Part shown: positions 5,366 to 20,431 of the stretch, piece by piece
How positions within the stretch are numbered: the first letter of the stretch is position 1
How the letters are laid out: each line of letters begins with the position of its first letter
Virus record (IMG/VR): IMGVR_UViG_3300028840_008160
Coordinates: 1 to 64,000 of that record
Strand: one strand, 5' to 3'
Length of the DNA stretch: 64,000 nt
Notes under the pieces: model-generated
Databases searched by the model: none
Seen by the model: the letters and a program-made list of their open reading frames with translations, nothing else
What the model was told of the DNA's origin: nothing
Translations under genes and position numbers: made by a program

Positions 5366-5587
5366 ATGGACACATCAGTTGGAAATCTACGAAAAATGTT
5401 AGAGAGTTTGCCAGATGAGGCAGACATTGTGACTGAAGATTGGGATGGTGCTGCTATTAGAAGAATGAATCATAGCACAAATGAGCCCTTAGCACTGGAA
5501 GAATTGCTTATGGTTCATGATGGTAGACTCTATATTGTCAATAAGCAAGCTACTGAAAACGAATGTCATCGATGGCAACGAGGTTGA
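5366..5587 (+). CDS. Small hypothetical protein
   Basis: 73-aa ORF directly upstream of pncB; VGNLRKMLESLPDEADI resembles common small phage proteins. Confidence 0.55.
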   Translation: MDTSVGNLRKMLESLPDEADIVTEDWDGAAIRRMNHSTNEPLALEELLMVHDGRLYIVNKQATENECHRWQRG

Positions 5588-5589
5588 CT

Positions 5590-6774
5590 ATGCAAGGACC
5601 AATAAGCGCAATCGACAATGATCAGTACAAGTTCTCAATGCAAAATGGTGTTGTGAAGTTGTTTCCTCGCGAAATTGTTCGATACGAGTTTTTTAATCGA
5701 GGCAAACATGAGTTTCCGGATGGATTTGCGAAACTTCTGCGTGAACTAGTAGATATGTATGCTGCTATTACATTTGTCAAAGATGACATCGATTTTTTTA
5801 GAGAAAAAGCTTACTATTTTGATCCTGCATATCATTCGTTTTTACGAGGCTACAGATATGATCCGTCAGAAGTGAAAATCATTCAAGAAGGTTACAATCT
5901 TCAAGTAATTGTGGAGGGCTTATGGCACAAAACAATTCTATGGGAAGTGCCGCTTATGGCATTGATCTGCGAATTGTATTATGAAATGACTAAACAACAA
6001 CCAAAAGACAGAAAAGAACGAGAGCAAATCAACAAAGAGAAAGTTATTGCTCTTACAAAATTGTTAATCAAAGCAGCAGAATTTGGAACAAGACGACGGT
6101 TTTCTTTTATTAATCAAAAAGAGTTTTTAATTGATGCTATAACTTATGGCAATTTTGCTGGACATAAACTTCTTTCTGGAACAAGCAATGTATATTTTGC
6201 ACGTGAACTTGATCTTCTATCAATAGGTACACAAGCTCATGAGTGGTACATGTTTCACGCTGCGAAGTATGGTTTTAGAATGGCTAACTTGCTCGGTATG
6301 GAAAACTGGGTTAAAGTATATAATGGAGATTTGGGAATAGTTCTTCCAGATACATTCACCACTGATGCTTTTCTCAAGTCTTTTAATACAATGTTTGCAA
6401 AGCTGTTCGACGGCAGTAGACAAGATAGTGATTGTCCGTTCGCATACACAGATAAATTTGTCAAACATTATCGTGATTTGAAAATTCCGTCACAACACAA
6501 AACAATTGTTTATTCTGACGGAATAAGCAGTGTTAAAACCGTGAGTGATATCAAGGAATATGCAACAGGAAAAGTGCAAGACGGATATGGTATTGGTACA
6601 TGGTTTACAAACGATGTTGGTCTTAAGCCGATGAATATCGTTATTAAGATGACAGCTGCATTTATAAACGGAGTATGGGTACCTACAATTAAGTTGTCTG
6701 ACGCAGCAACGAAGAATACAGGAGATCAGATTCAAATTGGAATTGCTAAACATGAATTAGGGATAAATGTATGA
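5590..6774 (+). CDS. pncB: Nicotinate phosphoribosyltransferase
   Basis: DNDQYKFSMQ, EFGTRRRFS, GTSN, GTQAHEW (phospho-His motif as in E. coli PncB), DTF, RQDS, GIGT, KLSD. Start placed at ATG 5590 after gagg; the track ORF starts at 5563. Confidence 0.92.
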   Translation: MQGPISAIDNDQYKFSMQNGVVKLFPREIVRYEFFNRGKHEFPDGFAKLLRELVDMYAAITFVKDDIDFFREKAYYFDPAYHSFLRGYRYDPSEVKIIQEGYNLQVIVEGLWHKTILWEVPLMALICELYYEMTKQQPKDRKEREQINKEKVIALTKLLIKAAEFGTRRRFSFINQKEFLIDAITYGNFAGHKLLSGTSNVYFARELDLLSIGTQAHEWYMFHAAKYGFRMANLLGMENWVKVYNGDLGIVLPDTFTTDAFLKSFNTMFAKLFDGSRQDSDCPFAYTDKFVKHYRDLKIPSQHKTIVYSDGISSVKTVSDIKEYATGKVQDGYGIGTWFTNDVGLKPMNIVIKMTAAFINGVWVPTIKLSDAATKNTGDQIQIGIAKHELGINV

Positions 6775-6887: not shown

Positions 6888-7796
6888 ATGGACAACTTGG
6901 TGTATACGACAAAGATTAGTGATAGTGCTTATGCTTATGCAGTAAAGAAAATGCAAAACATTTTTCGTCAGTATTTAATTGATAACAATCGAAAAGCTGT
7001 TGTTATTGGAATGTCGGGTGGTATTGATAGTGCTCTAACTGCAGCTTTGGCTGGGCAAGTATGTGCAGAATTAGAAATACCGCTTGTTGGTAGAAGTCTA
7101 CCAATAATGACGAATAAACCTGATGAAGTAGAACGTGCCGCAAGAGCTGGTAAAATATTTTGTTCTAATTTTGGTGAAAAAGATTTAACTAGTGCATATA
7201 CTGCTTTACACGAATTGATGGATGACATTGATGCTAGCAGTGATGAGCAATTAACTTTGACAGTAAAGATTCGAGAAGGTAATATTAAAGCGCGAACAAG
7301 AATGATATATCTTTATGATCTTGCTAGAAAAAATGATGGATTGGTTTTGTCAACTGATAACTATACAGAATTAATGCTCGGTTTCTGGACACTTCATGGT
7401 GATGTAGGCGATTTTGGATTACTTCAGAATATTTGGAAAACAGAAGTATATGAAATGGCAAGATTTTTATGTCGCGCAGGATTAGATGATGATGCTATTC
7501 AAATACTAAAAGACACTATTACTGCTGTTCCGACAGATGGTTTAGGAATTACAAATAGTGATTTAGATCAGCTTGGAGCAGGCAGCTATGAAGAGGTTGA
7601 CAAAATTTTGATGACATATTTATCTGGTTCAAGAAAAGAATATATGAATCATCCAGTTATCATAAGACATTTGACATCTGTTTATAAGAGAGCGAATCCT
7701 GTTAATATAGCTAGAAAAGATATTCTTCCTTCTGTTTATAAGAGAGCGAATCCTGTTAATATAGCTAGAAAAGATATTCTTCCTTTAACAGCATGA
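6888..7796 (+). CDS. nadE: NH3-dependent NAD+ synthetase
   Basis: PP-loop SGGIDS, GNIKARTRM, TDNYTE, GFWTLHGDVGD, KTEV, PTDGL; no glutaminase domain. Confidence 0.92.
   Translation: MDNLVYTTKISDSAYAYAVKKMQNIFRQYLIDNNRKAVVIGMSGGIDSALTAALAGQVCAELEIPLVGRSLPIMTNKPDEVERAARAGKIFCSNFGEKDLTSAYTALHELMDDIDASSDEQLTLTVKIREGNIKARTRMIYLYDLARKNDGLVLSTDNYTELMLGFWTLHGDVGDFGLLQNIWKTEVYEMARFLCRAGLDDDAIQILKDTITAVPTDGLGITNSDLDQLGAGSYEEVDKILMTYLSGSRKEYMNHPVIIRHLTSVYKRANPVNIARKDILPSVYKRANPVNIARKDILPLTA
7677..7784 (+). repeat. Perfect 54-bp in-frame tandem duplication in the nadE 3' end
   Basis: tctgtttataagagagcgaatcctgttaatatagctagaaaagatattcttcct at 7677-7730 and 7731-7784 (SVYKRANPVNIARKDILP x2). Confidence 0.95.
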
Positions 7797-7802
7797 GATT
7801 TT

Positions 7803-8552
7803 ATGTGGATAAAGAATCAAGCAATCATCGTCGGAACTGATCACATTCATACTAAGACTAATCGTCAAGATTATGTATTAACTTATAGTGATAGAGATAT
7901 TACATGCGGCGTTGTGTGTGACGGTTGCAGTTCTGGACAATTTTCTGAATTTGGTGCATGTTTTATTGCAAATTTAGTAATAAAATTATTGAAAACTAAT
8001 CGAGAAGCAACTGCTGAATTGTTGACAGTTGAAATGATGATTGAAATAAAACGTGCTATAGACAGCGTTCTTTTTTTACTTCATGATTATTCAACAACAT
8101 TGCCTATAGATATAGCACATTTTATTGAACATCATTTTTTATCGACATTTGTTTTTTGCATGATAGCTGGTGATAGAATTATCATAGGTCGTTGCGGTGA
8201 TGGCTTGACGATTGTAAATGGTATAGCTGACATTGCTGATCAGAAGAATGCGCCGCATTATATTGCGTATAACAATGTGCCGAAATTTTTGTTATCAACG
8301 TCAGATTTGAATGGCATTGAAATACAGGTATTAAATGAAGTAGAGGTGAACAGCATTGTTATTGGTACAGATGGATTGGTGCCGCTTCTAGAAGCTAATG
8401 AAGGTCATGAATTGTTTGGAACTGAGAAGAGACAGTTACAACGGAAATTTAATGTATGGCAAAATAAAAGACAGTTATTTCATGATGATGTTTCATGCGT
8501 TGTTTTTGAAAAGGTGAAGAATGAAGATAGTATTATGCGGGCAAACGATTGA
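7803..8552 (+). CDS. PP2C-family protein phosphatase (TerY-P/YegK-like)
   Basis: G.DH...NRQD, VVCDGCSS, GDG, GTDGL and DDVS metal-binding motifs. Confidence 0.8.
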   Translation: MWIKNQAIIVGTDHIHTKTNRQDYVLTYSDRDITCGVVCDGCSSGQFSEFGACFIANLVIKLLKTNREATAELLTVEMMIEIKRAIDSVLFLLHDYSTTLPIDIAHFIEHHFLSTFVFCMIAGDRIIIGRCGDGLTIVNGIADIADQKNAPHYIAYNNVPKFLLSTSDLNGIEIQVLNEVEVNSIVIGTDGLVPLLEANEGHELFGTEKRQLQRKFNVWQNKRQLFHDDVSCVVFEKVKNEDSIMRAND

Positions 8553-10383
8553 TTTAGATCAGAGCAAATTACTTGGCAGTGGTGGTGAGGCTAATGTTAT
8601 TAGACATGGCAAATATGCAATAAAAGTGTATCATAAACCGACCGTTGACAGAATTCAGAAATTGACTGATTTTTTTAAGAAGGGATTTAATTTACCAAAT
8701 AATGTTTTCAGTCCTATCGAGCCTGTGACAAGCACTAAAGGTAAGATGATAGGTTTTGCCATGCAGGCAGCAACAAAAAAGTGTCCTGAGTTTATTCATC
8801 TTTACGATACTACGTTTCGTAGCACACAACGTATTAGTTCGGTGGATATTGTTAAGTTATTTATTCACACTAAACAAACGCTGGATGCTATACATCAACT
8901 TGGATTGGTAGTAGGTGATTTTAATGATTTAAATCAACTTTTTGACGATACATTTTCTTCTATCTTTATAGATGTAGATTCTTATCAGTTTGATAATTAT
9001 CCATGTATAGTCGGGACAGATTCATATATCGATCCAAATTTGTATGGATTTGATTTGACTAAGAAGCCGTCATTTTCAAAACAAACTGATTGGTACTCGT
9101 TTGCTGTTTTACTATTTAGAAGTTTATTGTTTGTGCATCCTTATGGAGGATTTTACAAAAAATATAAGACGCTATTTGCACGAGCTCAAAATAATGTATG
9201 GGTATTTGATAGTAATGTTATTAAGCCAAAAATAGGATTACATCCGGAAACATTGAGCGACGAGTTGTTGAGTTATTTTGATGCAATATTCACGAAAGGT
9301 CAACGATTAGATTTACCATTACATCTTTTGCAGCAGCAAACATTTAACGAATGTAAAGTTTGCGGCACGCAATTTAGTCATACACGAGGTAAATGCCCAC
9401 AATGTCAGAAAGTCGCCCCGTTTAAGACTGTTGATGTTAGTAGTATTTTAACACATAAAGTTATTGGCAATGAGAAGTGTGAGACTACAACTGTATTCGA
9501 AGTTAACGGCACAATTTTGTTTGTCAAAGTTGTTGCTGGTATAATAGTAATAGTATCGTATGATGACAGTTCAACAGTGCTTGATACAATTGATACGAGT
9601 GGCTATAAGCAACGTGTAGTGTTGTGGTCTGGGCACAGAAAAGATGTAAAGTTTGATTTTATGTTTCCATCATGTTTGGTTGTTGGGTATGATAAAACAT
9701 TAATATTACTACATATTGGTGATAGTGACGCTAAAGAAATTGTTAAAACAACAACAATGACATTTTTAGATGAACCTATTTTTGGATGTAGTGAAAGTCA
9801 TTTGTATCGTTTGACACCAACGATGATAATGTCATCGCAATTACACCGTTCAGGTCAGTTAATAGAAAAAGGATTAGTATCAGCTGTAGCAAATCAAACG
9901 CAGTTTTTTGTGGGACAAAATCAATTTGGTTTGGGATTCTATAGAGTTTTCAGTGATTATAAATTCTTTACGGTGTCTGACATACAAGGTAGACATGAGG
10001 TAGAATTAGATCAATTAAATGGACAGATGATTGATATTGATGTCAAAGTATCTGTTAATAGTTTGATTTTATTGCGAAAGAGTTTGAATAAAGGTCGGAC
10101 ATATTCACATTGGCATATGATAAATGATAAAGGTCAGGTTGTTGAATCTAAGTCAGAAGAGTCAATTAATTCAGAATTGCTTAGAAACATTCATGGAAAG
10201 GAGCTCGCAGGGTCTAATATCATTCATTCTACAGATGCAGGTATTGCCGTTGAGAAGCATGGTAATGTATCGTTGAAGGTATCAACAGCAGAGATTGTTA
10301 ATACAGGTCATAGATTAATGTTATACAAACACGGACTGTTAGCAGTTTCTGAAAAGAAAATCGTGTATCTTGTTTTGAAGTAG
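8521..10383 (+). CDS. Ser/Thr protein kinase (YegI/TerY-P-like) with Zn ribbon and beta-rich C-terminal region
   Basis: LGSGGEA glycine loop, AIKVY, VGDFNDLN catalytic loop, IDVDS, TDWYSFAV, HPY; CKVC...CPQC. Confidence 0.82.
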   Translation: MKIVLCGQTIDLDQSKLLGSGGEANVIRHGKYAIKVYHKPTVDRIQKLTDFFKKGFNLPNNVFSPIEPVTSTKGKMIGFAMQAATKKCPEFIHLYDTTFRSTQRISSVDIVKLFIHTKQTLDAIHQLGLVVGDFNDLNQLFDDTFSSIFIDVDSYQFDNYPCIVGTDSYIDPNLYGFDLTKKPSFSKQTDWYSFAVLLFRSLLFVHPYGGFYKKYKTLFARAQNNVWVFDSNVIKPKIGLHPETLSDELLSYFDAIFTKGQRLDLPLHLLQQQTFNECKVCGTQFSHTRGKCPQCQKVAPFKTVDVSSILTHKVIGNEKCETTTVFEVNGTILFVKVVAGIIVIVSYDDSSTVLDTIDTSGYKQRVVLWSGHRKDVKFDFMFPSCLVVGYDKTLILLHIGDSDAKEIVKTTTMTFLDEPIFGCSESHLYRLTPTMIMSSQLHRSGQLIEKGLVSAVANQTQFFVGQNQFGLGFYRVFSDYKFFTVSDIQGRHEVELDQLNGQMIDIDVKVSVNSLILLRKSLNKGRTYSHWHMINDKGQVVESKSEESINSELLRNIHGKELAGSNIIHSTDAGIAVEKHGNVSLKVSTAEIVNTGHRLMLYKHGLLAVSEKKIVYLVLK

Positions 10384-10393
10384 GAGGATTTTT

Positions 10394-10678
10394 GTGGCTA
10401 AGAAATTGTATGTTGGTAATCTCCCTTGGAGTGCTACTGACGAAAGTCTGCGCGATTTTTGCGCACAGTTTGGTGAAGTTGTATCGGCTCAGGTAATCAC
10501 GGATCGAGAGTCTGGTCGGTCACGTGGTTTTGGTTTCGTCGAAATGACAAATGCTGATGAAGCAATGTCTTTACTTAATGGTAAAGATTTTGACGGCAGA
10601 CAGCTCAAGGTGAATGAAGCCCGTGAGCGGCAGAAACCACAAAGAAGCGGTGGTGAATATAACAGAAACAGATATTAA
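10394..10678 (+). CDS. RRM (RNP-1) RNA-binding protein
   Basis: RNP2 KLYVGNL, RNP1 RGFGFVEM, LNGKDFDGRQLKVNEA; RBS aggagg. Confidence 0.93.
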   Translation: MAKKLYVGNLPWSATDESLRDFCAQFGEVVSAQVITDRESGRSRGFGFVEMTNADEAMSLLNGKDFDGRQLKVNEARERQKPQRSGGEYNRNRY

Positions 10679-10730: not shown

Positions 10731-11693
10731 ATGAATAAACCTACGTTTTATGATCCGGCTAAAATAGGTACATTGTACCTTCCACGGCTAGCAGACATAG
10801 AGGCAGAAGCTGCGAAAGTAAGTATTCCGGCTTCTGCCTCTGATCGTCCCGGTGCTAAAGTTGCACTGATGCTTATCGATTTTCAAATTGATTTTTGCCA
10901 TAAGACAGGGTCGTTGTATGTCAATGGTGCAGAAAAAGACATAGAGAATGCTGTCAACTTCATTTTAGCAAATCTTGAGCGGCTTACGAACATTTTTGCG
11001 TCTTTGGATTCACACCTTCTTTTCCAGATTTTCTATCGTACATGGTGGCAATTACAGAACGGCGAGAAGCCTGATTTGTTTACAGAAATTTACAAAGAAG
11101 GTGGTTCTGGCCCAATGGCGAAGAATATTGACAGCGGTGATGTTCGACCGTTGCTTGACCCTGTTAACAGTATCAGCTATACTGAAAAGTTGATGCTTCA
11201 GGCAAATAAGCCTCTTTGCATTTGGCCATATCATACAATGCTTGGTACTCCGGGACAGGCGATGGATCCTGCATTGTACGAAGTTTTGGCTTATCATGCG
11301 TTTGTCAGGAAGACACAGTTGAATTTCTTACAGAAGGGACAAATACCTCAAACTGAAATGTATGGTATTCTCAGCCCTGAGGTAAAGATGCCGAATCATC
11401 CACAAGGCGGATTCAACACTGATTTTCTTAACATTCTGATGAAGCATGATAAAGTTATTATTGCCGGCGAGGCAAAGAGTCATTGTGTGTTGGCTTCTAT
11501 CATGCAGATTCATGAGTTTTTCAGCAAAACAGACCCTGATGTTTTGAAGAAAGTATTCATTTTGGAAGATTGTATGAGTTCTGTGCCTCATCCAGCGATT
11601 GATTTTGAAGCTATTGCTGTTGCTGAATTTGACAAATTCAGAAATTCTGGCATTAACATCGTCAAAAGTACCGATTTGGATCTTACAGCATAA
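10731..11693 (+). CDS. pncA: Nicotinamidase-like cysteine hydrolase (isochorismatase fold)
   Basis: LIDFQIDFC (catalytic Asp), LDSH and WPYH metal ligands, KG, AGEAKSHCV (catalytic Cys); clustered with pncB and nadE. Confidence 0.78.
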   Translation: MNKPTFYDPAKIGTLYLPRLADIEAEAAKVSIPASASDRPGAKVALMLIDFQIDFCHKTGSLYVNGAEKDIENAVNFILANLERLTNIFASLDSHLLFQIFYRTWWQLQNGEKPDLFTEIYKEGGSGPMAKNIDSGDVRPLLDPVNSISYTEKLMLQANKPLCIWPYHTMLGTPGQAMDPALYEVLAYHAFVRKTQLNFLQKGQIPQTEMYGILSPEVKMPNHPQGGFNTDFLNILMKHDKVIIAGEAKSHCVLASIMQIHEFFSKTDPDVLKKVFILEDCMSSVPHPAIDFEAIAVAEFDKFRNSGINIVKSTDLDLTA

Positions 11694-11722: not shown

Positions 11723-12505
11723 ATGTCATCAAATCCGATTGGCATTACAGATATTAAAAGTCTTGTATCTAATGCCGTAAGTGAGAATGAGGTTAGCGAT
11801 GCTGCAGGTCAGATAATGATAAGCAGCTTGAACGACACAAATATTCTTGGTTGTACCGGTGTTGATGTCGACGATCTTACTGTCGACAATGTGACATTGG
11901 TATCAATCGCGCTAGACGCGTCATATTCAATGTACGAACATGAACAGACTGTTCGTGAAGCATATGATGAATTGGTCATCAAAGCTATGAAAGAATCAAA
12001 GCAGGCGAATTCAATGCTTGTCAGCACTCGAGTCTTTGACGAAACTGATCGAATTCTTTATGGATTCAAGAAAGTCGAGGATGTTGGCAAAGTTGGTAGT
12101 CAATATACAGCACAAGGCGGAGCTACGCTACTTCATGATACAGCTATTGCAGCCATGACTGGCATTCGTGCTTATGCCAAGAACTTGAATGATAGTGGCG
12201 TACAGACAAAATGTATTGTTGTTGTCATGTCAGATGGAGGCAATAATACAGGGACTTTGAGTCCTGATCCTGTCAAGAAACTTGCTGAAGACTGTATCAA
12301 GTCAGAAATGTTCTATTTGGTGTATGTTGGATTTAAACAACACTCATCAGATAATCTTGAGGCAATCGGCAAGTCAATGGGATTTCCCAATGTATTGACT
12401 GCTGCTAAATCTCCTAGCGAAATGAGAAAAGCTATGGGTCTTGTTAGTCAATCAATTATTCGTGCTAGTCAAACACAGGTCGGGCCAAGTAATTCTTTCT
12501 TTTGA
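11723..12505 (+). CDS. vWA domain protein (TerY-like)
   Basis: MIDAS DASYS (DxSxS), GATLLHD, VVVMSDG. Confidence 0.8.
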   Translation: MSSNPIGITDIKSLVSNAVSENEVSDAAGQIMISSLNDTNILGCTGVDVDDLTVDNVTLVSIALDASYSMYEHEQTVREAYDELVIKAMKESKQANSMLVSTRVFDETDRILYGFKKVEDVGKVGSQYTAQGGATLLHDTAIAAMTGIRAYAKNLNDSGVQTKCIVVVMSDGGNNTGTLSPDPVKKLAEDCIKSEMFYLVYVGFKQHSSDNLEAIGKSMGFPNVLTAAKSPSEMRKAMGLVSQSIIRASQTQVGPSNSFF

Positions 12506-12530: not shown

Positions 12531-12556
12531 GGTCGGTTAAAACCGGCCTTTTCTTT
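12531..12556 (+). terminator. Intrinsic terminator ending the pncB-to-vWA cluster
   Basis: ggtcggt-taaa-accggcc stem-loop followed by a T-run. Confidence 0.6.
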
Positions 12557-12602
12557 GTAGTGTCATTGATTTATTTAATGATTATATTTAAGGAGGTGAT
12601 GA

Positions 12603-13106
12603 ATGATTAAATATCTTAAAGGTGATGCCACAGCACCGGTGTTAGATAAAGCATTGATAGCACACGTTTGTAATAATTGGGGAGGTTGGGGGGCTGGATT
12701 TGTATTAGCTATCTCAAAACGATGGTCTGAACCAGAAAAAGCATATCGTGACTGGTATAAAGGTATAGTAGACAATATCGCACAAGAACGTGACAAGGAT
12801 AAATTTGCATTAGGTAATGTGCAATTTGTGCTGGTGTTTGATAAAGGTATTTGGGTAGCTAACATGATTGCGCAAGACGGTTTCAAGAAAGCTGGCGATC
12901 CAAAAGACAAAGTTTATTTAGATTATGATGCGCTTAACATGACTCTTTGTGAAGTTTGCAAATTTGCAAGAAAGAAAGGTCTGACATTACATATGCCTAG
13001 AATAGGTTGCGGTCTTGCAGGAGGGCGATGGGATTTGATTGAACCATTACTTGAGACTCATTCTGATGATAACAAAGTTGATGTATACGTGTATGATTTT
13101 GAATGA
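12603..13106 (+). CDS. Macrodomain ADP-ribosylhydrolase (Poa1p/SCO6735-like)
   Basis: KGDAT, IAHVCNNWGGWGAGF, WVANMIAQ, HMPRIGCGLAGGRW. Confidence 0.85.
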   Translation: MIKYLKGDATAPVLDKALIAHVCNNWGGWGAGFVLAISKRWSEPEKAYRDWYKGIVDNIAQERDKDKFALGNVQFVLVFDKGIWVANMIAQDGFKKAGDPKDKVYLDYDALNMTLCEVCKFARKKGLTLHMPRIGCGLAGGRWDLIEPLLETHSDDNKVDVYVYDFE

Positions 13107-13489
13107 AACAAATTATTTTATATCCATGGCATAGTACAACTAGAGCTGAGTTTATACAAGCTCTTAAATCTAATCCAGAGCAAGCAACACTTGTTAAAGG
13201 AAACGACATTGTTAAGAGTAAAATGCGGTTTAATGTTGAGCCGAATAGAAATGATTGCAGTTCTTTGCATGAATTTAAAGACTATGAAATAACTATAAAA
13301 TGCTCTGATGGTGATGCAACTATTGTTTTAGATGATGGCAAGTTTGTATTTATTGAAGATTCAAATGTTCAAGAATTAAGTAAATATGAATTTATTTTAA
13401 ATGAAATACAAGAAGAAGAAAAGACAGAGCCGACAAGACAGCAAAGACAGCAAATGGCAAAACCTAGAAAGCCTTTTAAATTTAGGTAA
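13103..13489 (+). CDS. Hypothetical protein
   Basis: ATGA-coupled to the macrodomain gene. Confidence 0.55.
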   Translation: MKQIILYPWHSTTRAEFIQALKSNPEQATLVKGNDIVKSKMRFNVEPNRNDCSSLHEFKDYEITIKCSDGDATIVLDDGKFVFIEDSNVQELSKYEFILNEIQEEEKTEPTRQQRQQMAKPRKPFKFR

Positions 13490-13492
13490 GAT

Positions 13493-14176
13493 ATGAAACA
13501 GTTATTTAAAGCTGATTTTGTTCGTGATTCTTTTTTCACATATACAACCGGCATGCGTGATAAAAATGCTGTTCAACAAATTATGCTGGCGTATAGATTA
13601 GCTAAATATGCTCAAATGAATAAGTTTGGTGGTGATAATATTGATAGACCGAAAATTGCTGTGAAGATATTTTTGTTTTTGGTAAAACAATTTAGAAGGT
13701 CTTATACAAACATTAAGCTTGAAATTGATGTGACAGCTATATTGTTAAGTTATGTCATTCGCAATTCATACATGCTAACACAAGATGATGTTATAAAGAT
13801 ATTTGGACAAAACGTTGATAAAAAAGTTGCAGAATTAATTGGCTTTGATCGAATTGTAGATTCAAGAGCAAAAATTACAATTGCTAAACAATCTAAGTTT
13901 AAAGATGAGATTTCAAAGCAGACGATGATTATGCGTGCAGCTATAACAATGGCAGAATTAAGAACATTAACGTTAACTAAAGCAAGAGCATTTCCTGCAA
14001 AAGTATATGAACGCTATTTGCCGGTTTTTAACGCTTATCCAGATGTTTGTCATGTAGTAGCTAATGAGTTAAAAATATGGTTGGTTAAAAAATTGAAAGA
14101 AGCACAATCAAGCACAGATTATAATTTAACATCAGGAAATATGTTTTCATATTTTACTATTTTGCAAGATTTATAA
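13493..14176 (+). CDS. Degenerate RelA/SpoT-type HD (alarmone hydrolase-like) domain protein
   Basis: LAYRLAKYAQ, TAILLSYVIRNS...IFGQNV (cf. AALLHDVIEDT...FG.EV), IMRAAITMAELRTL (cf. IKLADRLHNMRTL), ERYLPVF; catalytic HD, ED and D residues are missing. Confidence 0.55.
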   Translation: MKQLFKADFVRDSFFTYTTGMRDKNAVQQIMLAYRLAKYAQMNKFGGDNIDRPKIAVKIFLFLVKQFRRSYTNIKLEIDVTAILLSYVIRNSYMLTQDDVIKIFGQNVDKKVAELIGFDRIVDSRAKITIAKQSKFKDEISKQTMIMRAAITMAELRTLTLTKARAFPAKVYERYLPVFNAYPDVCHVVANELKIWLVKKLKEAQSSTDYNLTSGNMFSYFTILQDL

Positions 14177-14995
14177 CTTTATATTTTGCTCATTTTTGAT
14201 AGCATCAATTAGTTTATTATATTTCTTCCGGTCAACAGACCACGAATTGTCTTTTTTCTGTCGAAGAAAGTTTTCATAGTAACTACGAGCATATCTGTTT
14301 GATGTTTTTTGCTCTAAATTGTTTAATTTTTGTTCTTCTGCAGACGTGTCTTCACCGCGTTTCTTTTTAAGCAAGTATTTAAGTGTTAGTTTAGCTAATT
14401 TCAAATTTTTCTTAATCGATTTTAGATTTTTCTTACGTATTTCAAAGTAAGCCCACGCTTTTTCTCCTGCATCAACGCGTGTAGTCATTGTTTCTGAATT
14501 AAACCAAGGTTGACGTTCTGCCCACTCTCTAAATAGTTTGCTATATTTTTCATATGATGCAGGATCCCAATTAGGATAATCGTCGTCTTCTTCAAATGGT
14601 CTCGAATGCCAAGTACCAAGATCTCTTATGCCAAACTCAACACCAATCGGCTTATTTTTGTTGTCGGTCTGAATTTCGGCTTCGTCTTTTTGTTGATGAA
14701 ACGAGTAATCATGTGGATCTTTTGGAAAGCGTAATGAATTGAGAGAATTTTTGATAGCATCTGCAGGAAATTCTTGTGATTGTTTTTGTGTTTGACGCTT
14801 TTGTGATAATTCTGATTTCAGTTCTTTTTTATCTGATGGCATAATCTGTTGTGCTGGTTGCCCTGGTTGCGCTGTTATTCTTCGTTTACTTTTTGGATGA
14901 CGTTGTAAATACGCTTTTTGTTCTTCGTATGTCAAATTATCCCACTTACGAGACTCTTTAATAAATTCAACTTGTATTTGAGCTAGATGTTTCAT
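14171..14995 (-). CDS. Hypothetical, probable internal head protein
   Basis: Strong RBS; N-terminal MKHLAQIQ..FIKES then WDNLTYEEQKAYLQRHPKSK motif shared with ORFs 19205 and 41131. Confidence 0.55.
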   Translation of the reverse strand: MKHLAQIQVEFIKESRKWDNLTYEEQKAYLQRHPKSKRRITAQPGQPAQQIMPSDKKELKSELSQKRQTQKQSQEFPADAIKNSLNSLRFPKDPHDYSFHQQKDEAEIQTDNKNKPIGVEFGIRDLGTWHSRPFEEDDDYPNWDPASYEKYSKLFREWAERQPWFNSETMTTRVDAGEKAWAYFEIRKKNLKSIKKNLKLAKLTLKYLLKKKRGEDTSAEEQKLNNLEQKTSNRYARSYYENFLRQKKDNSWSVDRKKYNKLIDAIKNEQNIKL

Positions 14996-15060: not shown

Positions 15061-15999
15061 ATGACTAGGATTTTGCAAATTGATGGTGGCGGTGTAAGAG
15101 GAATAATTCCTGCGATTATTTGCGCAGAAATAGAACAAAATGTCGGTCGTCCAATTAATGAAATTTTTGATTTAATCACTGGCACATCTACAGGAGCTGT
15201 AATAGGAGGTTCATTGGCATTTGGCATTGCTGCTACTACAGTTAGAGATTTGTATTTAACGGCTGTGCCAGAGCTATTTAAACGAAGACCGTTGTGGAAT
15301 CCTAAGAATTGGTTTAGAGAGAAGTATGACAGAACAGAGTTTCAAGAACAACTACGAAAATATCTTGGTAATCAAAAAATGTCTCAAGCAAAAACAAAAT
15401 ATATGGCGACAGCTTTTAATTTAAGTTCACAACGTACTCATTTTATTAAATCGTGGGACGACAAAGATAATAGATGGAATATAGTTGATGTCATTTCCTG
15501 GTCTGCTTTATCTGCTGCGTTTTATTTTGGAAAGATCAACGTGCCGAATTATAATTGGACACTTACTAATGCAATGAGTGCCACAGAACAAAAGATAGGA
15601 GCTACATTTCAAGACGGTGGACAGGGCATAAGTAATTGTACATTAGGATTTGATTTAGATGAATGTTTAGCAAATGATTGGCATGACGTGTTTATTTTAT
15701 CTATAGGCACAGGCCAACGTAGTATGTATATTCCTTATAAAAAGACAGCAAAAACCGGTTATATTGCACAAGTTATAGATTATATTTTTCAAGCTAGAAA
15801 TGAAGCGACGCCGACGCAATTTTTAACAGCAAAATATGTTGCCAACAAAAGAGAAGATTATATATTGAGTCGATTAGATGCGAACATTTCAAAGAAACAG
15901 GAACCACTTGATTCTATTAAATATGTTGATGAATACGAAAAAATAGGCAATGAATTAGCAAAGAAGGTGCCATATCAATATTTAAAGTCAATAGTGTAA
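15061..15999 (+). CDS. Patatin-like phospholipase
   Basis: DGGGVRG oxyanion loop, GTSTG nucleophile elbow, SALSAA, DGG, LSIGTG. Confidence 0.88.
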   Translation: MTRILQIDGGGVRGIIPAIICAEIEQNVGRPINEIFDLITGTSTGAVIGGSLAFGIAATTVRDLYLTAVPELFKRRPLWNPKNWFREKYDRTEFQEQLRKYLGNQKMSQAKTKYMATAFNLSSQRTHFIKSWDDKDNRWNIVDVISWSALSAAFYFGKINVPNYNWTLTNAMSATEQKIGATFQDGGQGISNCTLGFDLDECLANDWHDVFILSIGTGQRSMYIPYKKTAKTGYIAQVIDYIFQARNEATPTQFLTAKYVANKREDYILSRLDANISKKQEPLDSIKYVDEYEKIGNELAKKVPYQYLKSIV

Positions 16000-16182: not shown

Positions 16183-17112
16183 ATGAATTCTGCTATTTTA
16201 AAATCTCGCATTGACGAAGCGTCAACGATCCTCAAGTCATACTTCGATTTCAAAGAATCAGATAAAACTGTTGAAGTTATTATAACAGCTTTACAAAAAA
16301 TCGGCATTGATGATTCTGAATTAGGTTTCAAAATTCTTGAAGCAGAATCAACAACAGTTGCTGATTTCGCTCAAGCGTTTCGTGGTATGGGTTATGATCT
16401 TCCAGAGCCAAGAATTAAAGTTGCTTGGCTAATATTAAAAGGTCAAGATCCATTTGAACAAAAAGAAGTCAATCTTACGCCTCACAGCCCAGACTTAGTT
16501 AAAGCAGTCGTAGAACAACTAGAACGACAAAAGCCAATTGGACAATGGAGTGACACAGATTTACTAGAACAATATAGTAAGCATTGTCCGATGAAGATTG
16601 AAGAAGAACTTGCCAAAAGATCAAAAGGTCGACCTGTAATTATTTTTGAACAGGATGGTACAGTAAATTTACCTGTGTCACTTATATTGTTAAGACAGGC
16701 GCGACATCAGGATACGCCAAGCATGTATATTGTTGATGGTGAATCTAGTGGAATGCGACAAGTATATAAAGTCGGTGATTTTCCGATGAATGTTTTGTAT
16801 GAATGCCCTGTTCATGCCAATGTGCTTTTAACTGAAGGATATTGTGAAGAATGTGGCTTAAAGTGGGTAGATTTTGAGGCTAATAAAGATAAATATATTT
16901 TCTTAAGATTAGTATCAGAAACCACACGAATTGAGCCTGTTGTATTGAGAATGTATTTGACTCAGAGTTTTGAAGATTTGGTGAAACTATATCCTAAAGT
17001 TTTGATGAAGTATAACACATTGAAAGAAGAAGAGAAGTTACCGACTTTAAAGCGTCGCATTTCGAAAAGCAAAAATGGTGATCCTTTCCGAGTTGTTCAC
17101 ACTACATACTAA
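16183..17112 (+). CDS. Hypothetical protein with Zn ribbon
   Basis: RBS aaggag; CPVH...GYCEECG. Confidence 0.65.
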   Translation: MNSAILKSRIDEASTILKSYFDFKESDKTVEVIITALQKIGIDDSELGFKILEAESTTVADFAQAFRGMGYDLPEPRIKVAWLILKGQDPFEQKEVNLTPHSPDLVKAVVEQLERQKPIGQWSDTDLLEQYSKHCPMKIEEELAKRSKGRPVIIFEQDGTVNLPVSLILLRQARHQDTPSMYIVDGESSGMRQVYKVGDFPMNVLYECPVHANVLLTEGYCEECGLKWVDFEANKDKYIFLRLVSETTRIEPVVLRMYLTQSFEDLVKLYPKVLMKYNTLKEEEKLPTLKRRISKSKNGDPFRVVHTTY

Positions 17113-17162: not shown

Positions 17163-18356
17163 GTGATGATAACGTCTAGAAATATATTAGGATTTTCTGT
17201 TGCCCCTAACATGTGTAGAGTAATGGAGGCAAATGGATTTTATGCATCAATAATGAAGTCAGAAAAACGAAAAGATGATGATGGCGGATTGCCGTCCGGA
17301 ATGCCTATACCTGTTATGCCAGTTGATTTTTTGAAAGATAGACCAGATTTTTGGGTTGGCGGCATTGGTTCATTTTGCTGCCCTGTTGAGTCTGACTGGG
17401 GTCTGTGGTTTAATTGGACGATGAATATATCTAATATAGCTGTATTGTCGTCAGTAAAAGGAATGAATCCAATTACTGGTCAACGTGTTAATGGGTTAGA
17501 ATTGGAACAATATAAAGAACAATGCCCTATTCATAAAGTGAAATTTCAGCATGGTAAATTTTGTCCTAAATGTAATTTCAAATGGCCAGATCAAAATTAC
17601 ATTACAGAGCCAAATCTATTATATTGGGACGGGTTTAGAACAGCCGATGGTCAAGTTAGACAATTTTATTTTACAGAAGATCTTGCAAAATCTGTCCCTG
17701 AATTGGTCATTGGTAAAGATGATACAGTACCAGCATTTGGGTTTTGTTTTTATATGCCGAAGAAAGTAGAGTCTATAAATTATGAAGGTGGTAAGCGATT
17801 AAAGAATAAATTTCTAGAAATAGAAAAAATGACTGTTTCTTCTGGAAGTAGTTTGAGCATGGGTATGGTGAGAGGAATGTCAATACCTGGCGTTTATACT
17901 AAAATGGTCGATGATACTTATAAACATTCATCAAGTGTATATTATGCATCTTTAGCACCAATTTGTATGGATATGTGTAATAATTCTTATGTCGGATCAA
18001 CTGTAGCTGATGGGGCATCTACAAAGTTTTCGCTCACTTCATCTGCTGATATCAATGCGTTTAATGTAAGTGATGTTAAATTGAGTTTAGAGACGAGTGA
18101 ACTAGCAGATGAGTTAATACTTAGAGAAAGAAGTGAAAATGCTGAAGTTGGAATTGGAGCAGGTGCGAAACTTAAACAATCGCTTATGCAAGATGTAAGA
18201 ACTGTTGATTCATGGCAAAATAAACCTGCAGGAGTGATTAGAGTATATTTTGTTTTTAGAGAGCAATTTGAACGATATGTTAGTGCTGGATTGAATAATT
18301 TAGCTGGTCATAAAGAAGGTTATTTAAGTGATCTTCCTGTAGGAGGTAACAAATGA
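17163..18356 (+). CDS. Conserved-looking hypothetical protein with Zn ribbon
   Basis: CPIH...FCPKC; QNY...WDGF...GQVRQF and EVGIGAGAKLKQ...D...W motifs. Confidence 0.6.
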   Translation: MMITSRNILGFSVAPNMCRVMEANGFYASIMKSEKRKDDDGGLPSGMPIPVMPVDFLKDRPDFWVGGIGSFCCPVESDWGLWFNWTMNISNIAVLSSVKGMNPITGQRVNGLELEQYKEQCPIHKVKFQHGKFCPKCNFKWPDQNYITEPNLLYWDGFRTADGQVRQFYFTEDLAKSVPELVIGKDDTVPAFGFCFYMPKKVESINYEGGKRLKNKFLEIEKMTVSSGSSLSMGMVRGMSIPGVYTKMVDDTYKHSSSVYYASLAPICMDMCNNSYVGSTVADGASTKFSLTSSADINAFNVSDVKLSLETSELADELILRERSENAEVGIGAGAKLKQSLMQDVRTVDSWQNKPAGVIRVYFVFREQFERYVSAGLNNLAGHKEGYLSDLPVGGNK

Positions 18357-19084
18357 ATACAGTTGACTTGTTGTTTATAGTTGATGTTACTGGGTCAATG
18401 AGTGGATTTATAAGTGATGCAAAACAAAAAATGAAGTTTGTATTATCTTCACTAAAGAAACAATTTGAAATCGATTTGAAAGTTGGATTGAGTTTATATC
18501 GTGATCATCTATCGCAAGACACATCATTCGTTACAGCAGTTTTTGATTTAGCATCAATTGACGAGGTTAAAGATAAAATCGATAAAATAACTGTTGGTGG
18601 CGGTGGTGATCATCCTGAGGCTGTGATTGATGGAATTATTGATGGCATTACTGATATGAAATGGCGCGAAGATAGTAGAAGGATAGCATTTTTGATTGGT
18701 GATGCACCGGCTCACGGTATGATTTATGGTGAAAGTTGCTGTCAATGTGGTCAAACGTGGGGCAAAGCAGTGGCTTGCGCAGAGAAACATAAAGTGACAA
18801 TTTATTCTATACTGTTAAGCGGCGATGAGCAAGCAAGATTAAATTTCAAACTTATTTCTAATTTTACTGGAGGGTTATTAATTGAGAGTGATAATGCAAT
18901 GGATGTAATAGTTAATACACTTACTACTGAGTTTGGTAATGTTAATTTAGATTCAAAGATTTTAGAAATGATGGCAAATAAATTTAGCAATGAAGATATT
19001 TGTAAGATGTTAAATGTTGATAGAGATGAATTGGCTGACTCAAAGTCTAGAATAGCACAATATGCTAGCACTGTGTTAATATAA
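18353..19084 (+). CDS. vWA domain protein
   Basis: DLLFIVDVTGSM, YRDH, GGGDHPEAV, W-R, IGDAPAH; ATGA-coupled to the upstream gene. Confidence 0.85.
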   Translation: MNTVDLLFIVDVTGSMSGFISDAKQKMKFVLSSLKKQFEIDLKVGLSLYRDHLSQDTSFVTAVFDLASIDEVKDKIDKITVGGGGDHPEAVIDGIIDGITDMKWREDSRRIAFLIGDAPAHGMIYGESCCQCGQTWGKAVACAEKHKVTIYSILLSGDEQARLNFKLISNFTGGLLIESDNAMDVIVNTLTTEFGNVNLDSKILEMMANKFSNEDICKMLNVDRDELADSKSRIAQYASTVLI

Positions 19085-19204: not shown

Positions 19205-20431
19205 ATGATGAAACATTTGGCTATAATTCAGAAGCAATTTTCTATATTATGCATAAGCAACAGCATTGTCAAGAAGGCTATTGACGAAAATTGGTGGAAA
19301 AAGTTATCTCCTGAAGAACAACGAAAATATTTAATGCAACATAGACGAACAAAATTGCGACCGACAAGTCAACCGTTTAATCTTACGCAGACAATATTTA
19401 GAAGTGTGCCGGCTAGTTGGAAAAAAACAATATCTTATGCTGGTGGTGGGAATAATTCTGATATTGAACAGTTGCCAGATATGCTTAGATCAAAGGTGCT
19501 AAAAGATGCTTTTTCTGCAGGTGCTAAAGCTGTAGTCGGGTTTAAGTCTGGCACTAATATTACAAAGATGAAGCCGGTTTTTATTATTACGTCATCAACT
19601 TGGAGCAGATCACCTAAGTTTAATATTGAAACTGCTATTGATAGTAATGGTAACACGATTAATCCAGTACGTTTATATGATATTAAGCCTCGTTATAGTC
19701 GTCGTAATCGAGTTTCTTGGGATGAAAGAGTAACAGATTTAAGAATGACAAATATTATAGGCAAATTACCTGATGAACCGTACACTGTTTATGCTATTAA
19801 AGCTGATCCAAAAAGACAAGAAATAAAACAACAACGATCATTTATGAAGGAAAAAAATCGCCCTGGTCGTGTTGATGTTGAAAATAGAATGATAGCTGAT
19901 GTTGTAAAGCCAGTATATGATTATTATTCTGCAAAATTACAACAAGGTCTAGAACAATTAAGAGATGTGGCTGTGCCTAGTTTTAATGATTTGTTAGAAG
20001 ACACTGAATCAGAGATGGCAAATAAACGATATAAAATGTTAATTGACGATGTAAAGGACGCTAGAGATAAAATTGCTTCATTAAGCAGCGCTGTTTCTTC
20101 TCTAAAATGGCAGCATTTGCCAACTGGCGAACATTCATATTCAGATACATGGAGAGCCGGTGAAGCTAAAAGATTTATACGAGGAATAAACGAAATAAAA
20201 GAACGATTTGCAGATGACATGAAAGAAGCTAAAAAGACGAAATTAAAAGCGGCATATCAATCTTTACAAGAGTTTGATTTTTTAGATGCTTTTGATAAAT
20301 TTAATGATGTTGCTCAACCACAATTAGCAAAAGCTGTTTTAGAGTTAAAGTCTATTGATCGTGCATCTGAAGAATATAAAAATAGATTAAATGATATAAA
20401 AACAAAAGCATTAACAATAATGTATTCATAA
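19205..20431 (+). CDS. Hypothetical, probable internal head protein
   Basis: MKHLAIIQ N-terminus, IVKKA, then WWKKLSPEEQRKYLMQHRRTK motif. Confidence 0.55.
   Translation: MMKHLAIIQKQFSILCISNSIVKKAIDENWWKKLSPEEQRKYLMQHRRTKLRPTSQPFNLTQTIFRSVPASWKKTISYAGGGNNSDIEQLPDMLRSKVLKDAFSAGAKAVVGFKSGTNITKMKPVFIITSSTWSRSPKFNIETAIDSNGNTINPVRLYDIKPRYSRRNRVSWDERVTDLRMTNIIGKLPDEPYTVYAIKADPKRQEIKQQRSFMKEKNRPGRVDVENRMIADVVKPVYDYYSAKLQQGLEQLRDVAVPSFNDLLEDTESEMANKRYKMLIDDVKDARDKIASLSSAVSSLKWQHLPTGEHSYSDTWRAGEAKRFIRGINEIKERFADDMKEAKKTKLKAAYQSLQEFDFLDAFDKFNDVAQPQLAKAVLELKSIDRASEEYKNRLNDIKTKALTIMYS

What the first reader, a model, noticed from the sequence alone, without database searches (positions are those of the whole stretch)
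13493..14176. Apparently inactive alarmone-hydrolase (RelA/SpoT HD) mimic
Seen: the helical framework aligns by eye with the RelA/SpoT/Mesh1 hydrolase domain. However, HD becomes SY, ED becomes RN, and ADRLHN becomes AAITMAE, while the ORF stays intact. Inference: a pseudo-enzyme kept for binding. It could be a (p)ppGpp/(p)ppApp sponge or an inhibitor of Rel or toxic alarmone synthetases used in anti-phage defence. It lies two genes after the macrodomain gene.
Basis: inference. Interest (0 to 1): 0.6.

Follow-up and report, generated by a model that had tools for sequence, protein, structure and literature searches.

The report
Dead alarmone-hydrolase paralogue in a giant phage
This 227-residue gene of an uncultivated giant phage has the fold of the enzymes that destroy the bacterial stress signal (p)ppGpp, but it has lost every catalytic and metal-binding residue while staying under selection, so it is a pseudo-enzyme whose job is still unknown.

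Summary
Window 13493-14176 (+) is a real, conserved 227-aa gene. Its AlphaFold model (pLDDT 89) matches RelA/SpoT/Mesh1/SAH hydrolase domains above everything else in the PDB: the top 9 of 48,161 chains, Z 11-14. A profile-profile alignment to true SAHs is co-linear and stands about 7 sd above shuffled controls. It places S86-Y87 on HD, R90-N91 on ED and A150-I151-T152..E155 on A-D-R..N. None of the 18 family members keeps the metal or catalytic residues.

New facts:
- The same 330-kb phage record carries an intact SAH 234 kb away, so this gene is the dead member of a pair.
- The family is tiny: 15 clusters among 1.8 billion proteins, all on phage-like metagenome contigs.
- It is strongly basic (net +8 to +18 in 16 of 18), whereas true SAHs are near neutral.
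- It has its own invariant S/T/K loop.
- The substrate-contact residues are gone too, which argues against a classical ppGpp sponge.
- The macrodomain link holds in only three of six lineages with context. A small upstream ORF is the more constant neighbour.

Pseudo-enzyme status is well supported. What it binds is inference only.

The parts
13493..14176 (+). pseudo-SAH gene: 227 aa, RSH-type HD fold, no catalytic or metal residues, pI 9.7, net charge +14
13646..13666 (+). residues 52-58 (RPKIAVK). It aligns with T-P-E-F-A-H-Q of true SAHs. The first metal-binding His is V57 here and is aliphatic, Ala or Thr in all 18 members
13742..13768 (+). residues 84-92 (LLSYVIRNS): the degenerate L-H-D-x-x-E-D motif, with HD replaced by S86-Y87 and ED by R90-N91
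13853..13888 (+). residues 121-132 (IVDSRAKITIAK): a family-specific loop with I121, S124 and K132 invariant and T129 nearly so. It is longer than the matching alpha6-alpha7 stretch of true SAHs. It is a candidate new binding site (inference)
13934..13957 (+). residues 148-155 (RAAITMAE): the degenerate K-x-A-D-R-x-x-N motif. The Lys position stays basic in 17 of 18 members. D becomes I, R becomes T, N becomes E
13103..13489 (+). ORF128, a small protein with the C-terminal motif P-F-x-F-[KR]. Its start overlaps the macro gene's stop, and it ends 3 nt before the pseudo-SAH start. Homologues sit directly upstream of the pseudo-SAH in L002, L003 and L010, with remnants in L009
12603..13106 (+). 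macrodomain gene (phrog_335; weak DarG-like match). It is the first gene of the apparent three-gene unit and has a strong Shine-Dalgarno site
12531..12588 (+). terminator-like hairpin (12531-12548) followed by a promoter-like site (12560-12588) just upstream of the macro gene. These are consensus matches only

Best explanation
Shown. The gene encodes a stand-alone, catalytically dead descendant of a small alarmone hydrolase (RSH-type HD domain).
- All four Mn-binding positions are replaced: H, H-D and D become V57, S86-Y87 and I151.
- The E-D catalytic pair is replaced by R90-N91.
- The substrate-contact residues are replaced: the RKDG loop, R144 (T152 here) and N147 (E155 here).
- The gene is nevertheless kept under purifying selection in a small clade of uncultivated giant phages.
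- One of those phages, this one, also keeps an intact SAH elsewhere in its genome.

Inferred. The protein works by binding, not by hydrolysis. The acidic, metal-dependent half of the old cleft has been erased. The basic side is kept or reinforced: the Lys equivalent to Rel_Tt K143 stays basic in 17 of 18 members, there is a new invariant S124/T129/K132 loop at the alpha6-alpha7 position, K170 and R174 are conserved, and the net charge is +8 to +18. My best guess is that the remodelled cleft holds a phosphate-rich anionic partner, either a nucleotide derivative or an RNA end, without cleaving it. It would do so as the last gene of a macrodomain-ORF128-pseudoSAH unit in a region of metabolic and signalling genes (NAD salvage, PP2C/kinase/VWA).

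Rough odds: dead for canonical (p)ppGpp hydrolysis, about 0.9. Acts by binding an anionic ligand at the remodelled cleft, about 0.4. The identity of the ligand is unknown.
For: - Fold.
- Homology at sequence level: hhalign E 8e-4 over 171 co-linear columns, about 7 sd above 120 column shuffles. Five of 18 members give weak HD_4 hits, and HD_4 is the only Pfam family hit by more than one member.
- Motifs shared with true SAHs: D/E-[IV]-x-x-x-F-G and the basic residue of K-x-A-D-R.
- Loss of every invariant catalytic or ligand residue of the true family (H56, H84, D85, E88, D89, D143, R144, N147, R46-K47-D48-G49) in all 18 members.
- P0001 has a single His.
- Selection: pN/pS 0.24 with pS saturated, comparable to the neighbouring patatin and macro genes.
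- An intact paralogue in the same record, HD_4 at 36.8 bits, with all motifs present.
- Charge shift: net +8 to +18 in 16 of 18 members, against -3 to +2 in 16 true SAHs that include the same phage's own.
- In Rel_Tt the 5'-phosphates are held by K112, K143, R147 and K161, and the alpha6-alpha7 loop shapes that positive patch (10.1101/670703).
Against: - No ligand, partner or activity has been measured.
- Lys-rich proteins are common in AT-rich genomes. The phage's own SAH, at net 0, is a partial control for this.
- Two family members are near neutral (P0005, P0011).
- The base-recognition residues are lost, so any nucleotide binding would have to use a new mode.
- An invariant D99/S124/K132 set could in principle be a new catalytic centre.
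Confidence: 0.55

Rival explanations
1. Alarmone sponge. The dead hydrolase still binds (p)ppGpp or (p)ppApp in the old pocket and sequesters it.
For: It has the RSH HD fold. The equivalent of Rel_Tt K143 is kept basic. The charge is strongly positive. From general knowledge, phages are known to use nucleotide sponges against defence.
Against: All other contact residues are gone. The RKDG loop is variable in length and sequence, the R147 and N150 equivalents are T/V/I and variable, and there are no metal ligands. In Rel_Tt, removing Mn2+ with EDTA prevented the closed conformation normally induced by ppGpp. The phage already has an active SAH that would remove alarmones catalytically.
Confidence: 0.12
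2. Protein-binding pseudo-enzyme. It binds and inhibits, or acts as a decoy for, a host RSH enzyme or a toxic alarmone synthetase (toxSAS/CapRel). Alternatively it regulates the phage's own active SAH, or it works in a complex with ORF128.
For: From general knowledge, pseudo-enzymes often regulate their active paralogues. An active paralogue exists in this genome. Its orthologue and the pseudo-SAH orthologue occur in the same sample for the nearest relative. ORF128-like genes are translationally coupled upstream in 4 lineages. Phage SAHs are known to neutralise toxSAS (PMC9712102).
Against: There is no SYNTH or toxSAS gene in the record. The true SAH lies 234 kb away. Most true SAHs of that family occur without this protein: about 100 clusters against 15. 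ORF128 is missing in L006/L007. No interaction evidence of any kind was obtained.
Confidence: 0.15
3. Neo-enzyme. The HD scaffold has acquired a new, metal-independent active site, for example around invariant S124/K132/D99/T129, and catalyses a different reaction.
For: Invariant polar residues are not found in true SAHs, except D99, which matches a conserved Glu. The gene is under purifying selection.
Against: D99 aligns with a structural Glu of the E-I-x-x-x-F-G motif. I know of no precedent for a Ser/Lys centre on this fold, and there is no matching enzyme family in Pfam, NCBIfam or PHROGs.
Confidence: 0.1
4. A scaffold role unrelated to nucleotides. It is a conserved backbone gene of this phage clade, such as a structural or assembly factor, that merely retains an old fold.
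For: It always sits between the PP2C/kinase/VWA block and the ORF309/ORF397/VWA_4 block, whatever accessory genes are inserted around it.
Against: The conserved polar S/T/K loop and the basic surface look like a ligand site rather than a packing surface. It evolves faster than the backbone neighbours: 67% identity against 78-90%.
Confidence: 0.15
5. It is not homologous to SAHs: a helical bundle that resembles the HD fold by convergence or by model bias.
For: Pfam does not detect it. The deeper family profile finds no HD chain in the PDB by hmmsearch. The tool notes that helical models can reach Z of about 13-14 by chance.
Against: The nine best of 48,161 chains are all one family and cover the whole domain co-linearly. 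The profile-profile score is about 7 sd above shuffles and places each degenerate motif on its true counterpart. The language-model search agrees.
Confidence: 0.03

Closest known systems
Small alarmone hydrolases (SAH; Pfam HD_4), e.g. P. aeruginosa SAH 6YVC/6Z3N, C. glutamicum RelH 7QOC, Mesh1 5VXA, PaSpo of Salmonella phage SSU5
   Same: Single-domain protein of about 200 aa with the same all-helical HD fold (Z 11-13, rmsd 3.3-3.6 over about 160 residues). The helices come in the same order, and it shares the D/E-I-x-x-x-F-G motif and the Lys of K-x-A-D-R. Phage-encoded SAHs are known (PMC9712102).
   Different: It lacks H...HD..ED...D-R..N. The substrate loop is not conserved. It has an extra invariant S/T/K loop. 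It is strongly basic. It is below Pfam detection.
The phage's own SAH (G000:C1:247280-247957, = L001:1363-2040, P0019)
   Same: It is in the same genome, has similar length and the same fold family, and gives the best profile-profile match.
   Different: That copy keeps every catalytic residue, has net charge 0, is 85% conserved in the nearest relative against 67% for the pseudo-copy, and sits next to His_Phos_1, WGR and Tpt1-like genes.
Pseudo-hydrolase domain of E. coli RelA
   Same: It is an RSH HD domain that has lost hydrolase residues and serves a non-catalytic, regulatory role. In RelA the alpha6-alpha7 loop fills the pseudo-active site (10.1101/670703; PMC8012599, listed).
   Different: RelA's domain acts in cis within a protein of about 740 aa that also has SYNTH, TGS and ACT domains. 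This one is a free-standing 227-aa phage protein, and no SYNTH domain is found anywhere in the record.
Phage nucleotide sponges (Tad1, Tad2, Acb2), from my own knowledge
   Same: Only a possible functional analogy: a phage protein that binds a signalling nucleotide without degrading it.
   Different: There is no sequence or fold relationship, and binding has not been tested here.

Membership tests
RSH-type HD hydrolase / SAH (Pfam PF13328 HD_4) | HD-domain all-helical fold of the RelA/SpoT/Mesh1 type | tested here: met
   Model pLDDT 89. The top 9 of 48,161 PDB representatives are RSH HD domains, Z 11.1-14.3. Atlas hits are HD_4.
RSH-type HD hydrolase / SAH (Pfam PF13328 HD_4) | Scores above the Pfam HD_4 gathering threshold | tested here: not met
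   There is no HD_4 hit for this protein. Five of 18 relatives hit with best E 0.0031, below the cut-off. The phage's true SAH scores 36.8 bits, above the cut-off of 27.2.
RSH-type HD hydrolase / SAH (Pfam PF13328 HD_4) | Mn2+ ligands H...HD...D | tested here: not met
   They are replaced by V57, S86-Y87 and I151. No member of the family has them.
RSH-type HD hydrolase / SAH (Pfam PF13328 HD_4) | Catalytic E-D pair after the HD | tested here: not met
   R90-N91 here, and variable across the family.
RSH-type HD hydrolase / SAH (Pfam PF13328 HD_4) | Substrate-contact residues (R-K-D-G loop; R and N of A-D-R-x-x-N) | tested here: not met
   The loop at residues 46-51 is variable in length and sequence. 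R becomes T/V/I and N is variable. Only the Lys three residues before the Asp stays basic.
RSH-type HD hydrolase / SAH (Pfam PF13328 HD_4) | 3'-pyrophosphohydrolase activity | not testable with these tools
   This needs an enzyme assay.
RelA-type pseudo-hydrolase domain | Degenerate HD domain fused N-terminally to a SYNTH domain in a long RSH | tested here: not met
   The ORF is 227 aa with a stop codon. No RelA_SpoT (PF04607) match is found anywhere in the 329.8-kb record.
SAH-type antitoxin of a toxSAS toxin-antitoxin module | Adjacent toxSAS (RelA_SpoT synthetase) gene | tested here: not met
   The neighbours are the macrodomain, ORF128, ORF274 and the patatin gene. There is no SYNTH domain in the window's neighbours or in the record.
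SAH-type antitoxin of a toxSAS toxin-antitoxin module | Hydrolytic reversal of toxSAS products | not testable with these tools
   Unlikely given the lost catalytic residues, but it needs a rescue assay.

The most novel reading that the evidence does not exclude
A free-standing pseudo-SAH is a new kind of phage counter-defence or host-takeover factor. It would use the dead alarmone-hydrolase scaffold to hold, without cleaving, a pyrophosphorylated nucleotide or a modified tRNA 3' end, or to jam a host RSH or toxSAS enzyme. It would work beside the phage's catalytically active SAH.
Probability: 0.15. Interest if true: 0.8.

Novelty: new variant of a known kind. Interest (0 to 1): 0.5.

Why it matters
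Alarmone synthetases of the RelA/SpoT family are used both for the stringent response and as anti-phage toxins such as CapRel and FaRel. Phage-encoded active SAHs are already known to neutralise such toxins.

In my literature searches I found no description of a stand-alone, selected, catalytically dead SAH paralogue kept next to an active one in the same phage. The only precedent I found is the cis-acting pseudo-hydrolase domain of RelA.

If the protein binds alarmones, modified tRNA or an RSH enzyme, it would add a pseudo-enzyme mechanism to phage counter-defence. If it does none of these, it is still a clean example of an HD enzyme scaffold being repurposed. The family is small and easy to express, and the phage's own active SAH offers a built-in positive control.

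Tried and rejected
- Direct BLASTP of the protein against the phage's true SAH found nothing.
- hmmsearch of the 3-sequence profile against the PDB gave only a weak SAH hit (7p1y, E 0.44). With the 18-sequence profile that hit disappears. Profile-to-sequence methods do not detect the relationship.
- Pfam, PHROGs, NCBIfam and PADLOC gave no significant family for this protein.
- GenBank phages gave no match by megablast or tblastn, for this protein and for ORF397.
- The IMG/VR pattern scan failed with A2 (no conserved stretch) and found no relative with A1.
- A profile search of the 5.8-billion-protein set found no intermediates that keep HD residues.
- Complex prediction of pseudo-SAH with ORF128 scored 0.00 and gave no verdict. 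This is evidence neither for nor against binding.
- dN/dS could not be computed properly because synonymous sites are saturated. Only pN/pS is given.
- No RNA run holds the locus, so expression is untested.
- A search of the relatives' full contigs for a true SAH was not possible because the records are not held.
- ORF274, next to the pseudo-SAH, shares an N-terminal module with the two genes next to the true SAH. I rejected this as a meaningful link because the module occurs about 20 times in the genome.
- A MAG label on one relative's contig raised the idea of an archaeal host. I consider it unlikely because 34 of 59 genes have strong bacterial-type Shine-Dalgarno sites.

Full report
**1. 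What is there**

Window 13493-14176 (+) is an intact 227-aa ORF. It is the last gene of a tightly packed plus-strand trio.
- The macrodomain gene (12603-13106) has a strong Shine-Dalgarno site.
- ORF128 (13103-13489) starts inside the macro gene's stop codon (ATGA overlap).
- The ORF of interest starts 3 nt after ORF128 ends.
- A terminator-like hairpin and a promoter-like site lie just upstream of the macro gene. These are consensus matches only.
- The next gene, ORF274, is convergent and overlaps the 3' end by 6 nt.

The window is the first 64 kb of a 329.8-kb virus record. CheckV estimates it at 67% complete, and a 335.7-kb contig is on record. The window's G+C is about 34%, and it holds terminase, portal, prohead protease and topoisomerase II genes. 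Of 59 ORFs, 34 have AGGAGG-type ribosome-binding sites, which points to a bacterial host. The locus is found in sediment and seawater metagenomes, and no RNA run holds it.

**2. Is it a real gene?**

Yes.
- An exhaustive HMMER pass over 1.84 billion cluster representatives finds only 15 relatives, all 209-237 aa and all full length.
- The word-indexed searches add a 67% and a 46% homologue and a few more.
- Against the closest homologue, pN is 0.20 and pS is 0.85, so pN/pS is 0.24 with synonymous sites saturated. The true ratio is therefore lower.
- The neighbouring macro gene (0.19) and patatin gene (0.21) give similar values, and the VWA gene gives 0.10.
- The gene is single-copy in the record.

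**3. The fold**

- With three sequences, AlphaFold gave one good model out of five (pLDDT 78).
- With 18 sequences, all five models agree (pLDDT 86-89, pTM 0.89).
- In Foldseek against the PDB, the top hits are almost all Rel, SpoT, SAH or Mesh1, at weak E-values from 7e-3.
- VIA-align on those hits gives Z up to 13.7.
- The search that does not depend on Foldseek covers 48,161 representative chains. It ranks SpoT (Z 14.3), B. subtilis Rel (13.3), P. aeruginosa SAH (12.8, rmsd 3.3 over 160 residues), TdActApo2 SAH (12.6), RelH (12.3), Mn-free SpoT (12.1), Mesh1 (11.3), a Leptospira SAH (11.2) and bifunctional B. subtilis Rel (11.1) first.
- Other HD hydrolases follow at Z 8-9.6. Only 14 chains reach Z 8.
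- The tool warns that helical models can reach such Z values by chance. Here, however, one family fills the top of the list and covers the whole domain co-linearly.
- The ESM Atlas searches by language-model features and by structure return HD_4 clusters almost exclusively.

**4. Sequence-level homology and the residue claims**

Pfam does not see the protein. Five of its 18 relatives give sub-threshold HD_4 hits, and HD_4 is the only family hit by more than one member.

The same phage record contains a genuine SAH at 247.3-248.0 kb. It scores 36.8 bits on HD_4 and carries H...HD..ED...K-G-A-D-R-I-H-N. Its family (A3, 31 sequences) matches RSH hydrolase domains in the PDB at E 3e-19.

hhalign of the pseudo-family (A2) against A3 gave:
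- E 0.0036 over 115 columns with default settings;
- E 8e-4 over 171 co-linear columns, residues 23-205 against 10-210, at a lower alignment threshold;
- a score of 30.5, against 13.1 +/- 2.4 (maximum 20.1) for 120 column-shuffled controls and 16.1 for the reversed profile.

The alignment maps the invariant residues of true SAHs as follows, with the residues seen across the 18 members.

| True SAH residue | Role | This protein | Across the 18 members |
|---|---|---|---|
| H56 | first metal His | V57 | aliphatic, Ala or Thr |
| H84-D85 | HD | S86-Y87 | S/D/T/H/Y/C, then Y/F/C |
| E88-D89 | ED | R90-N91 | variable |
| K140 | Lys of K-x-A-D-R | R148 | basic in 17 of 18 |
| D143 | metal Asp | I151 | I/L/E/S/C/Y |
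| R144 | substrate contact | T152 | T/V/I |
| N147 | substrate contact | E155 | variable |

The H-x-G-x-R-K-D-G substrate loop falls on a stretch (residues 44-51) that varies in both length and sequence within the family. P0001 contains one histidine in total.

What the two families still share is the hydrophobic framework, the D/E-[IV]-x-x-x-F-G motif (D99, F104, G105) and that one basic residue.

**5. What the family has instead**

- Invariant or nearly invariant polar residues are R35, D99, S124, T129, K132 and K170. Y34, K38, Y39, S92, R174 and Y175 are also well conserved.
- S124, T129 and K132 lie in a segment with family consensus I-A-N-S-x-A-K-I-T-x-A-K (IVDSRAKITIAK here). It aligns with the alpha6-alpha7 region and is four residues longer than in the true SAH family.
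- In Rel_Tt the cleft has an acidic half that does the chemistry and a basic half (K112, K143, R147, K161) that holds the 5'-phosphates. The alpha6-alpha7 loop shapes that basic patch. In RelA the same loop plugs the pseudo-active site (bioRxiv 10.1101/670703).
- The pseudo-family is strikingly basic, with pI 9.25-9.8 and net charge +8 to +18 in 16 of 18 members. Sixteen true SAHs, including this phage's own, lie between -3 and +2.
- My reading is an inference, because I had no model coordinates to compute a surface. The acidic catalytic half has been erased and the basic half kept and extended. That fits binding of a phosphate-rich partner without hydrolysis. It does not fit canonical recognition of the guanine or adenine nucleotide.

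**6. Genomic context across relatives**

Six lineages give usable context.
- A backbone recurs: PP2C, a 620-aa kinase-like Zn-ribbon protein, an isochorismatase-like protein and a VWA protein upstream; ORF309, ORF397, VWA_4 and a protein of about 410-440 aa downstream. The pseudo-SAH always lies between the two blocks.
- ORF309 and ORF397 are 40% and 46% identical in the distant locus L006.
- Accessory genes come and go around the pseudo-SAH:
  - a macrodomain in the window, L002 and L003 only;
  - a non-specific endonuclease in L006/L007;
  - ABC-transporter genes in L010;
  - a ferritin-like gene in L009;
  - ORF274 and a patatin gene in the window and L002.
- The more constant neighbour is a small ORF128-like gene ending 1-6 nt before the pseudo-SAH start in the window, L002, L003 and L010. 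These share a C-terminal P-F-x-F-[K/R] motif, and frameshifted remnants are visible in L009.
- A complex prediction for this pair returned no verdict, so it is evidence neither way.
- The nearest relative's pseudo-SAH and true-SAH orthologues come from the same sample on different contigs. That is consistent with both genes being kept together, but it does not prove it.
- No RelA_SpoT synthetase domain is found in the record.

**7. Comparison with what is known**

By fold and descent the protein belongs to the RSH hydrolase (HD_4) superfamily. It fails every functional criterion of an SAH, so I do not file it as an SAH.

The nearest concept is the pseudo-hydrolase domain of RelA. That domain works in cis inside a long RSH, whereas this protein stands alone.

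Active phage SAHs are known: PaSpo of phage SSU5 is used to neutralise toxSAS (PMC9712102). SAH antitoxins of toxSAS modules are also known (PMC11782079). My literature searches turned up no stand-alone dead SAH. Absence from that library is not proof of novelty.

**8. Verdict**

This is a new variant of a known kind. It is of moderate interest because the function is unknown but directly testable, with the phage's own active SAH as a control.

Noticed in passing
outside the window: G000:C1:247280-247957 (L001:1363-2040): The same phage record encodes an intact small alarmone hydrolase with all catalytic motifs. A His_Phos_1 phosphatase follows it. In the close relative L008 it lies near WGR-domain and Tpt1 (PTS_2-RNA) genes.
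   Followed up: partly
window 5563-6774, 6888-7796, 10731-11693: There is a set of NAD salvage genes: NAPRTase, NAD synthase and a nicotinamidase-like isochorismatase-family protein. This may be a phage-borne Preiss-Handler route, perhaps against NAD-depleting defences.
   Followed up: no
window 7803-8552, 8521-10383, 11723-12505, 18353-19084: A PP2C phosphatase, a 620-aa kinase-like protein with a zinc ribbon and two VWA proteins form a backbone conserved in L002, L003 and L009. From my own recall it resembles the TerY-P (vWA/PP2C/kinase) triad.
   Followed up: no
window 15061-15999: A patatin-like phospholipase matches PADLOC phospholipase 'Effector' models at E 7e-42 (from my own recall, CBASS CapV-like). 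It is unexpected to find this encoded by a phage.
   Followed up: no
window 14171-14995 (-), 19283-19381 and 41167-41292, and about 19 more places in the record: An N-terminal module of about 45 aa (R-K-W-x-D-L-T-Y-E-E-Q-x-x-Y-L-x-R-H-P-x-S-K-R-R) heads 22 matches (18 at E < 0.001), lying in open frames of 32-704 aa. Most are clustered at 241-317 kb, including the two genes just upstream of the true SAH. It may be a shared targeting or packaging tag.
   Followed up: partly
window 13103-13489; L002:5643-5999; L003:5590-5994; L010:4679-4999: The small proteins upstream of the pseudo-SAH share a C-terminal P-F-x-F-[K/R] tail and a K-[YF]-x-F-I-L motif. L009 shows frameshifted remnants of the same gene.
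   Followed up: partly
window 16183-17112 and 17163-18356: ORF309 and ORF397 both carry C-P-x-H...G-x-C-x-x-C-x-x-K-W zinc-ribbon-like motifs. They are conserved at 40-46% identity in distant relatives, have no Pfam or PHROG family and have no homologue in cultured phages.
   Followed up: partly
window 12603-13106: The macrodomain (phrog_335) gives weak matches to the DarG antitoxin models over its C-terminal G-C-G-x-A-G-G region. It may be an ADP-ribose-removing counter-defence enzyme.
   Followed up: no
window 10394-10678: A 94-aa eukaryote-style RRM_1 RNA-binding protein is encoded by the phage (E 1.8e-20). It is also present in L002.
   Followed up: no
protein P0017 (family member, 102.8-kb contig): NCBI labels the contig as a Nitrosarchaeum MAG. 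This is probably a low-GC binning artefact, since the window's genes have bacterial-type Shine-Dalgarno sites.
   Followed up: no
window 32771-36613: The topoisomerase II subunit gene is 1280 aa. The PHROG match is split, covering residues 36-99 and 517-1178, which suggests an insertion of about 400 aa such as an intein or an extra domain.
   Followed up: no
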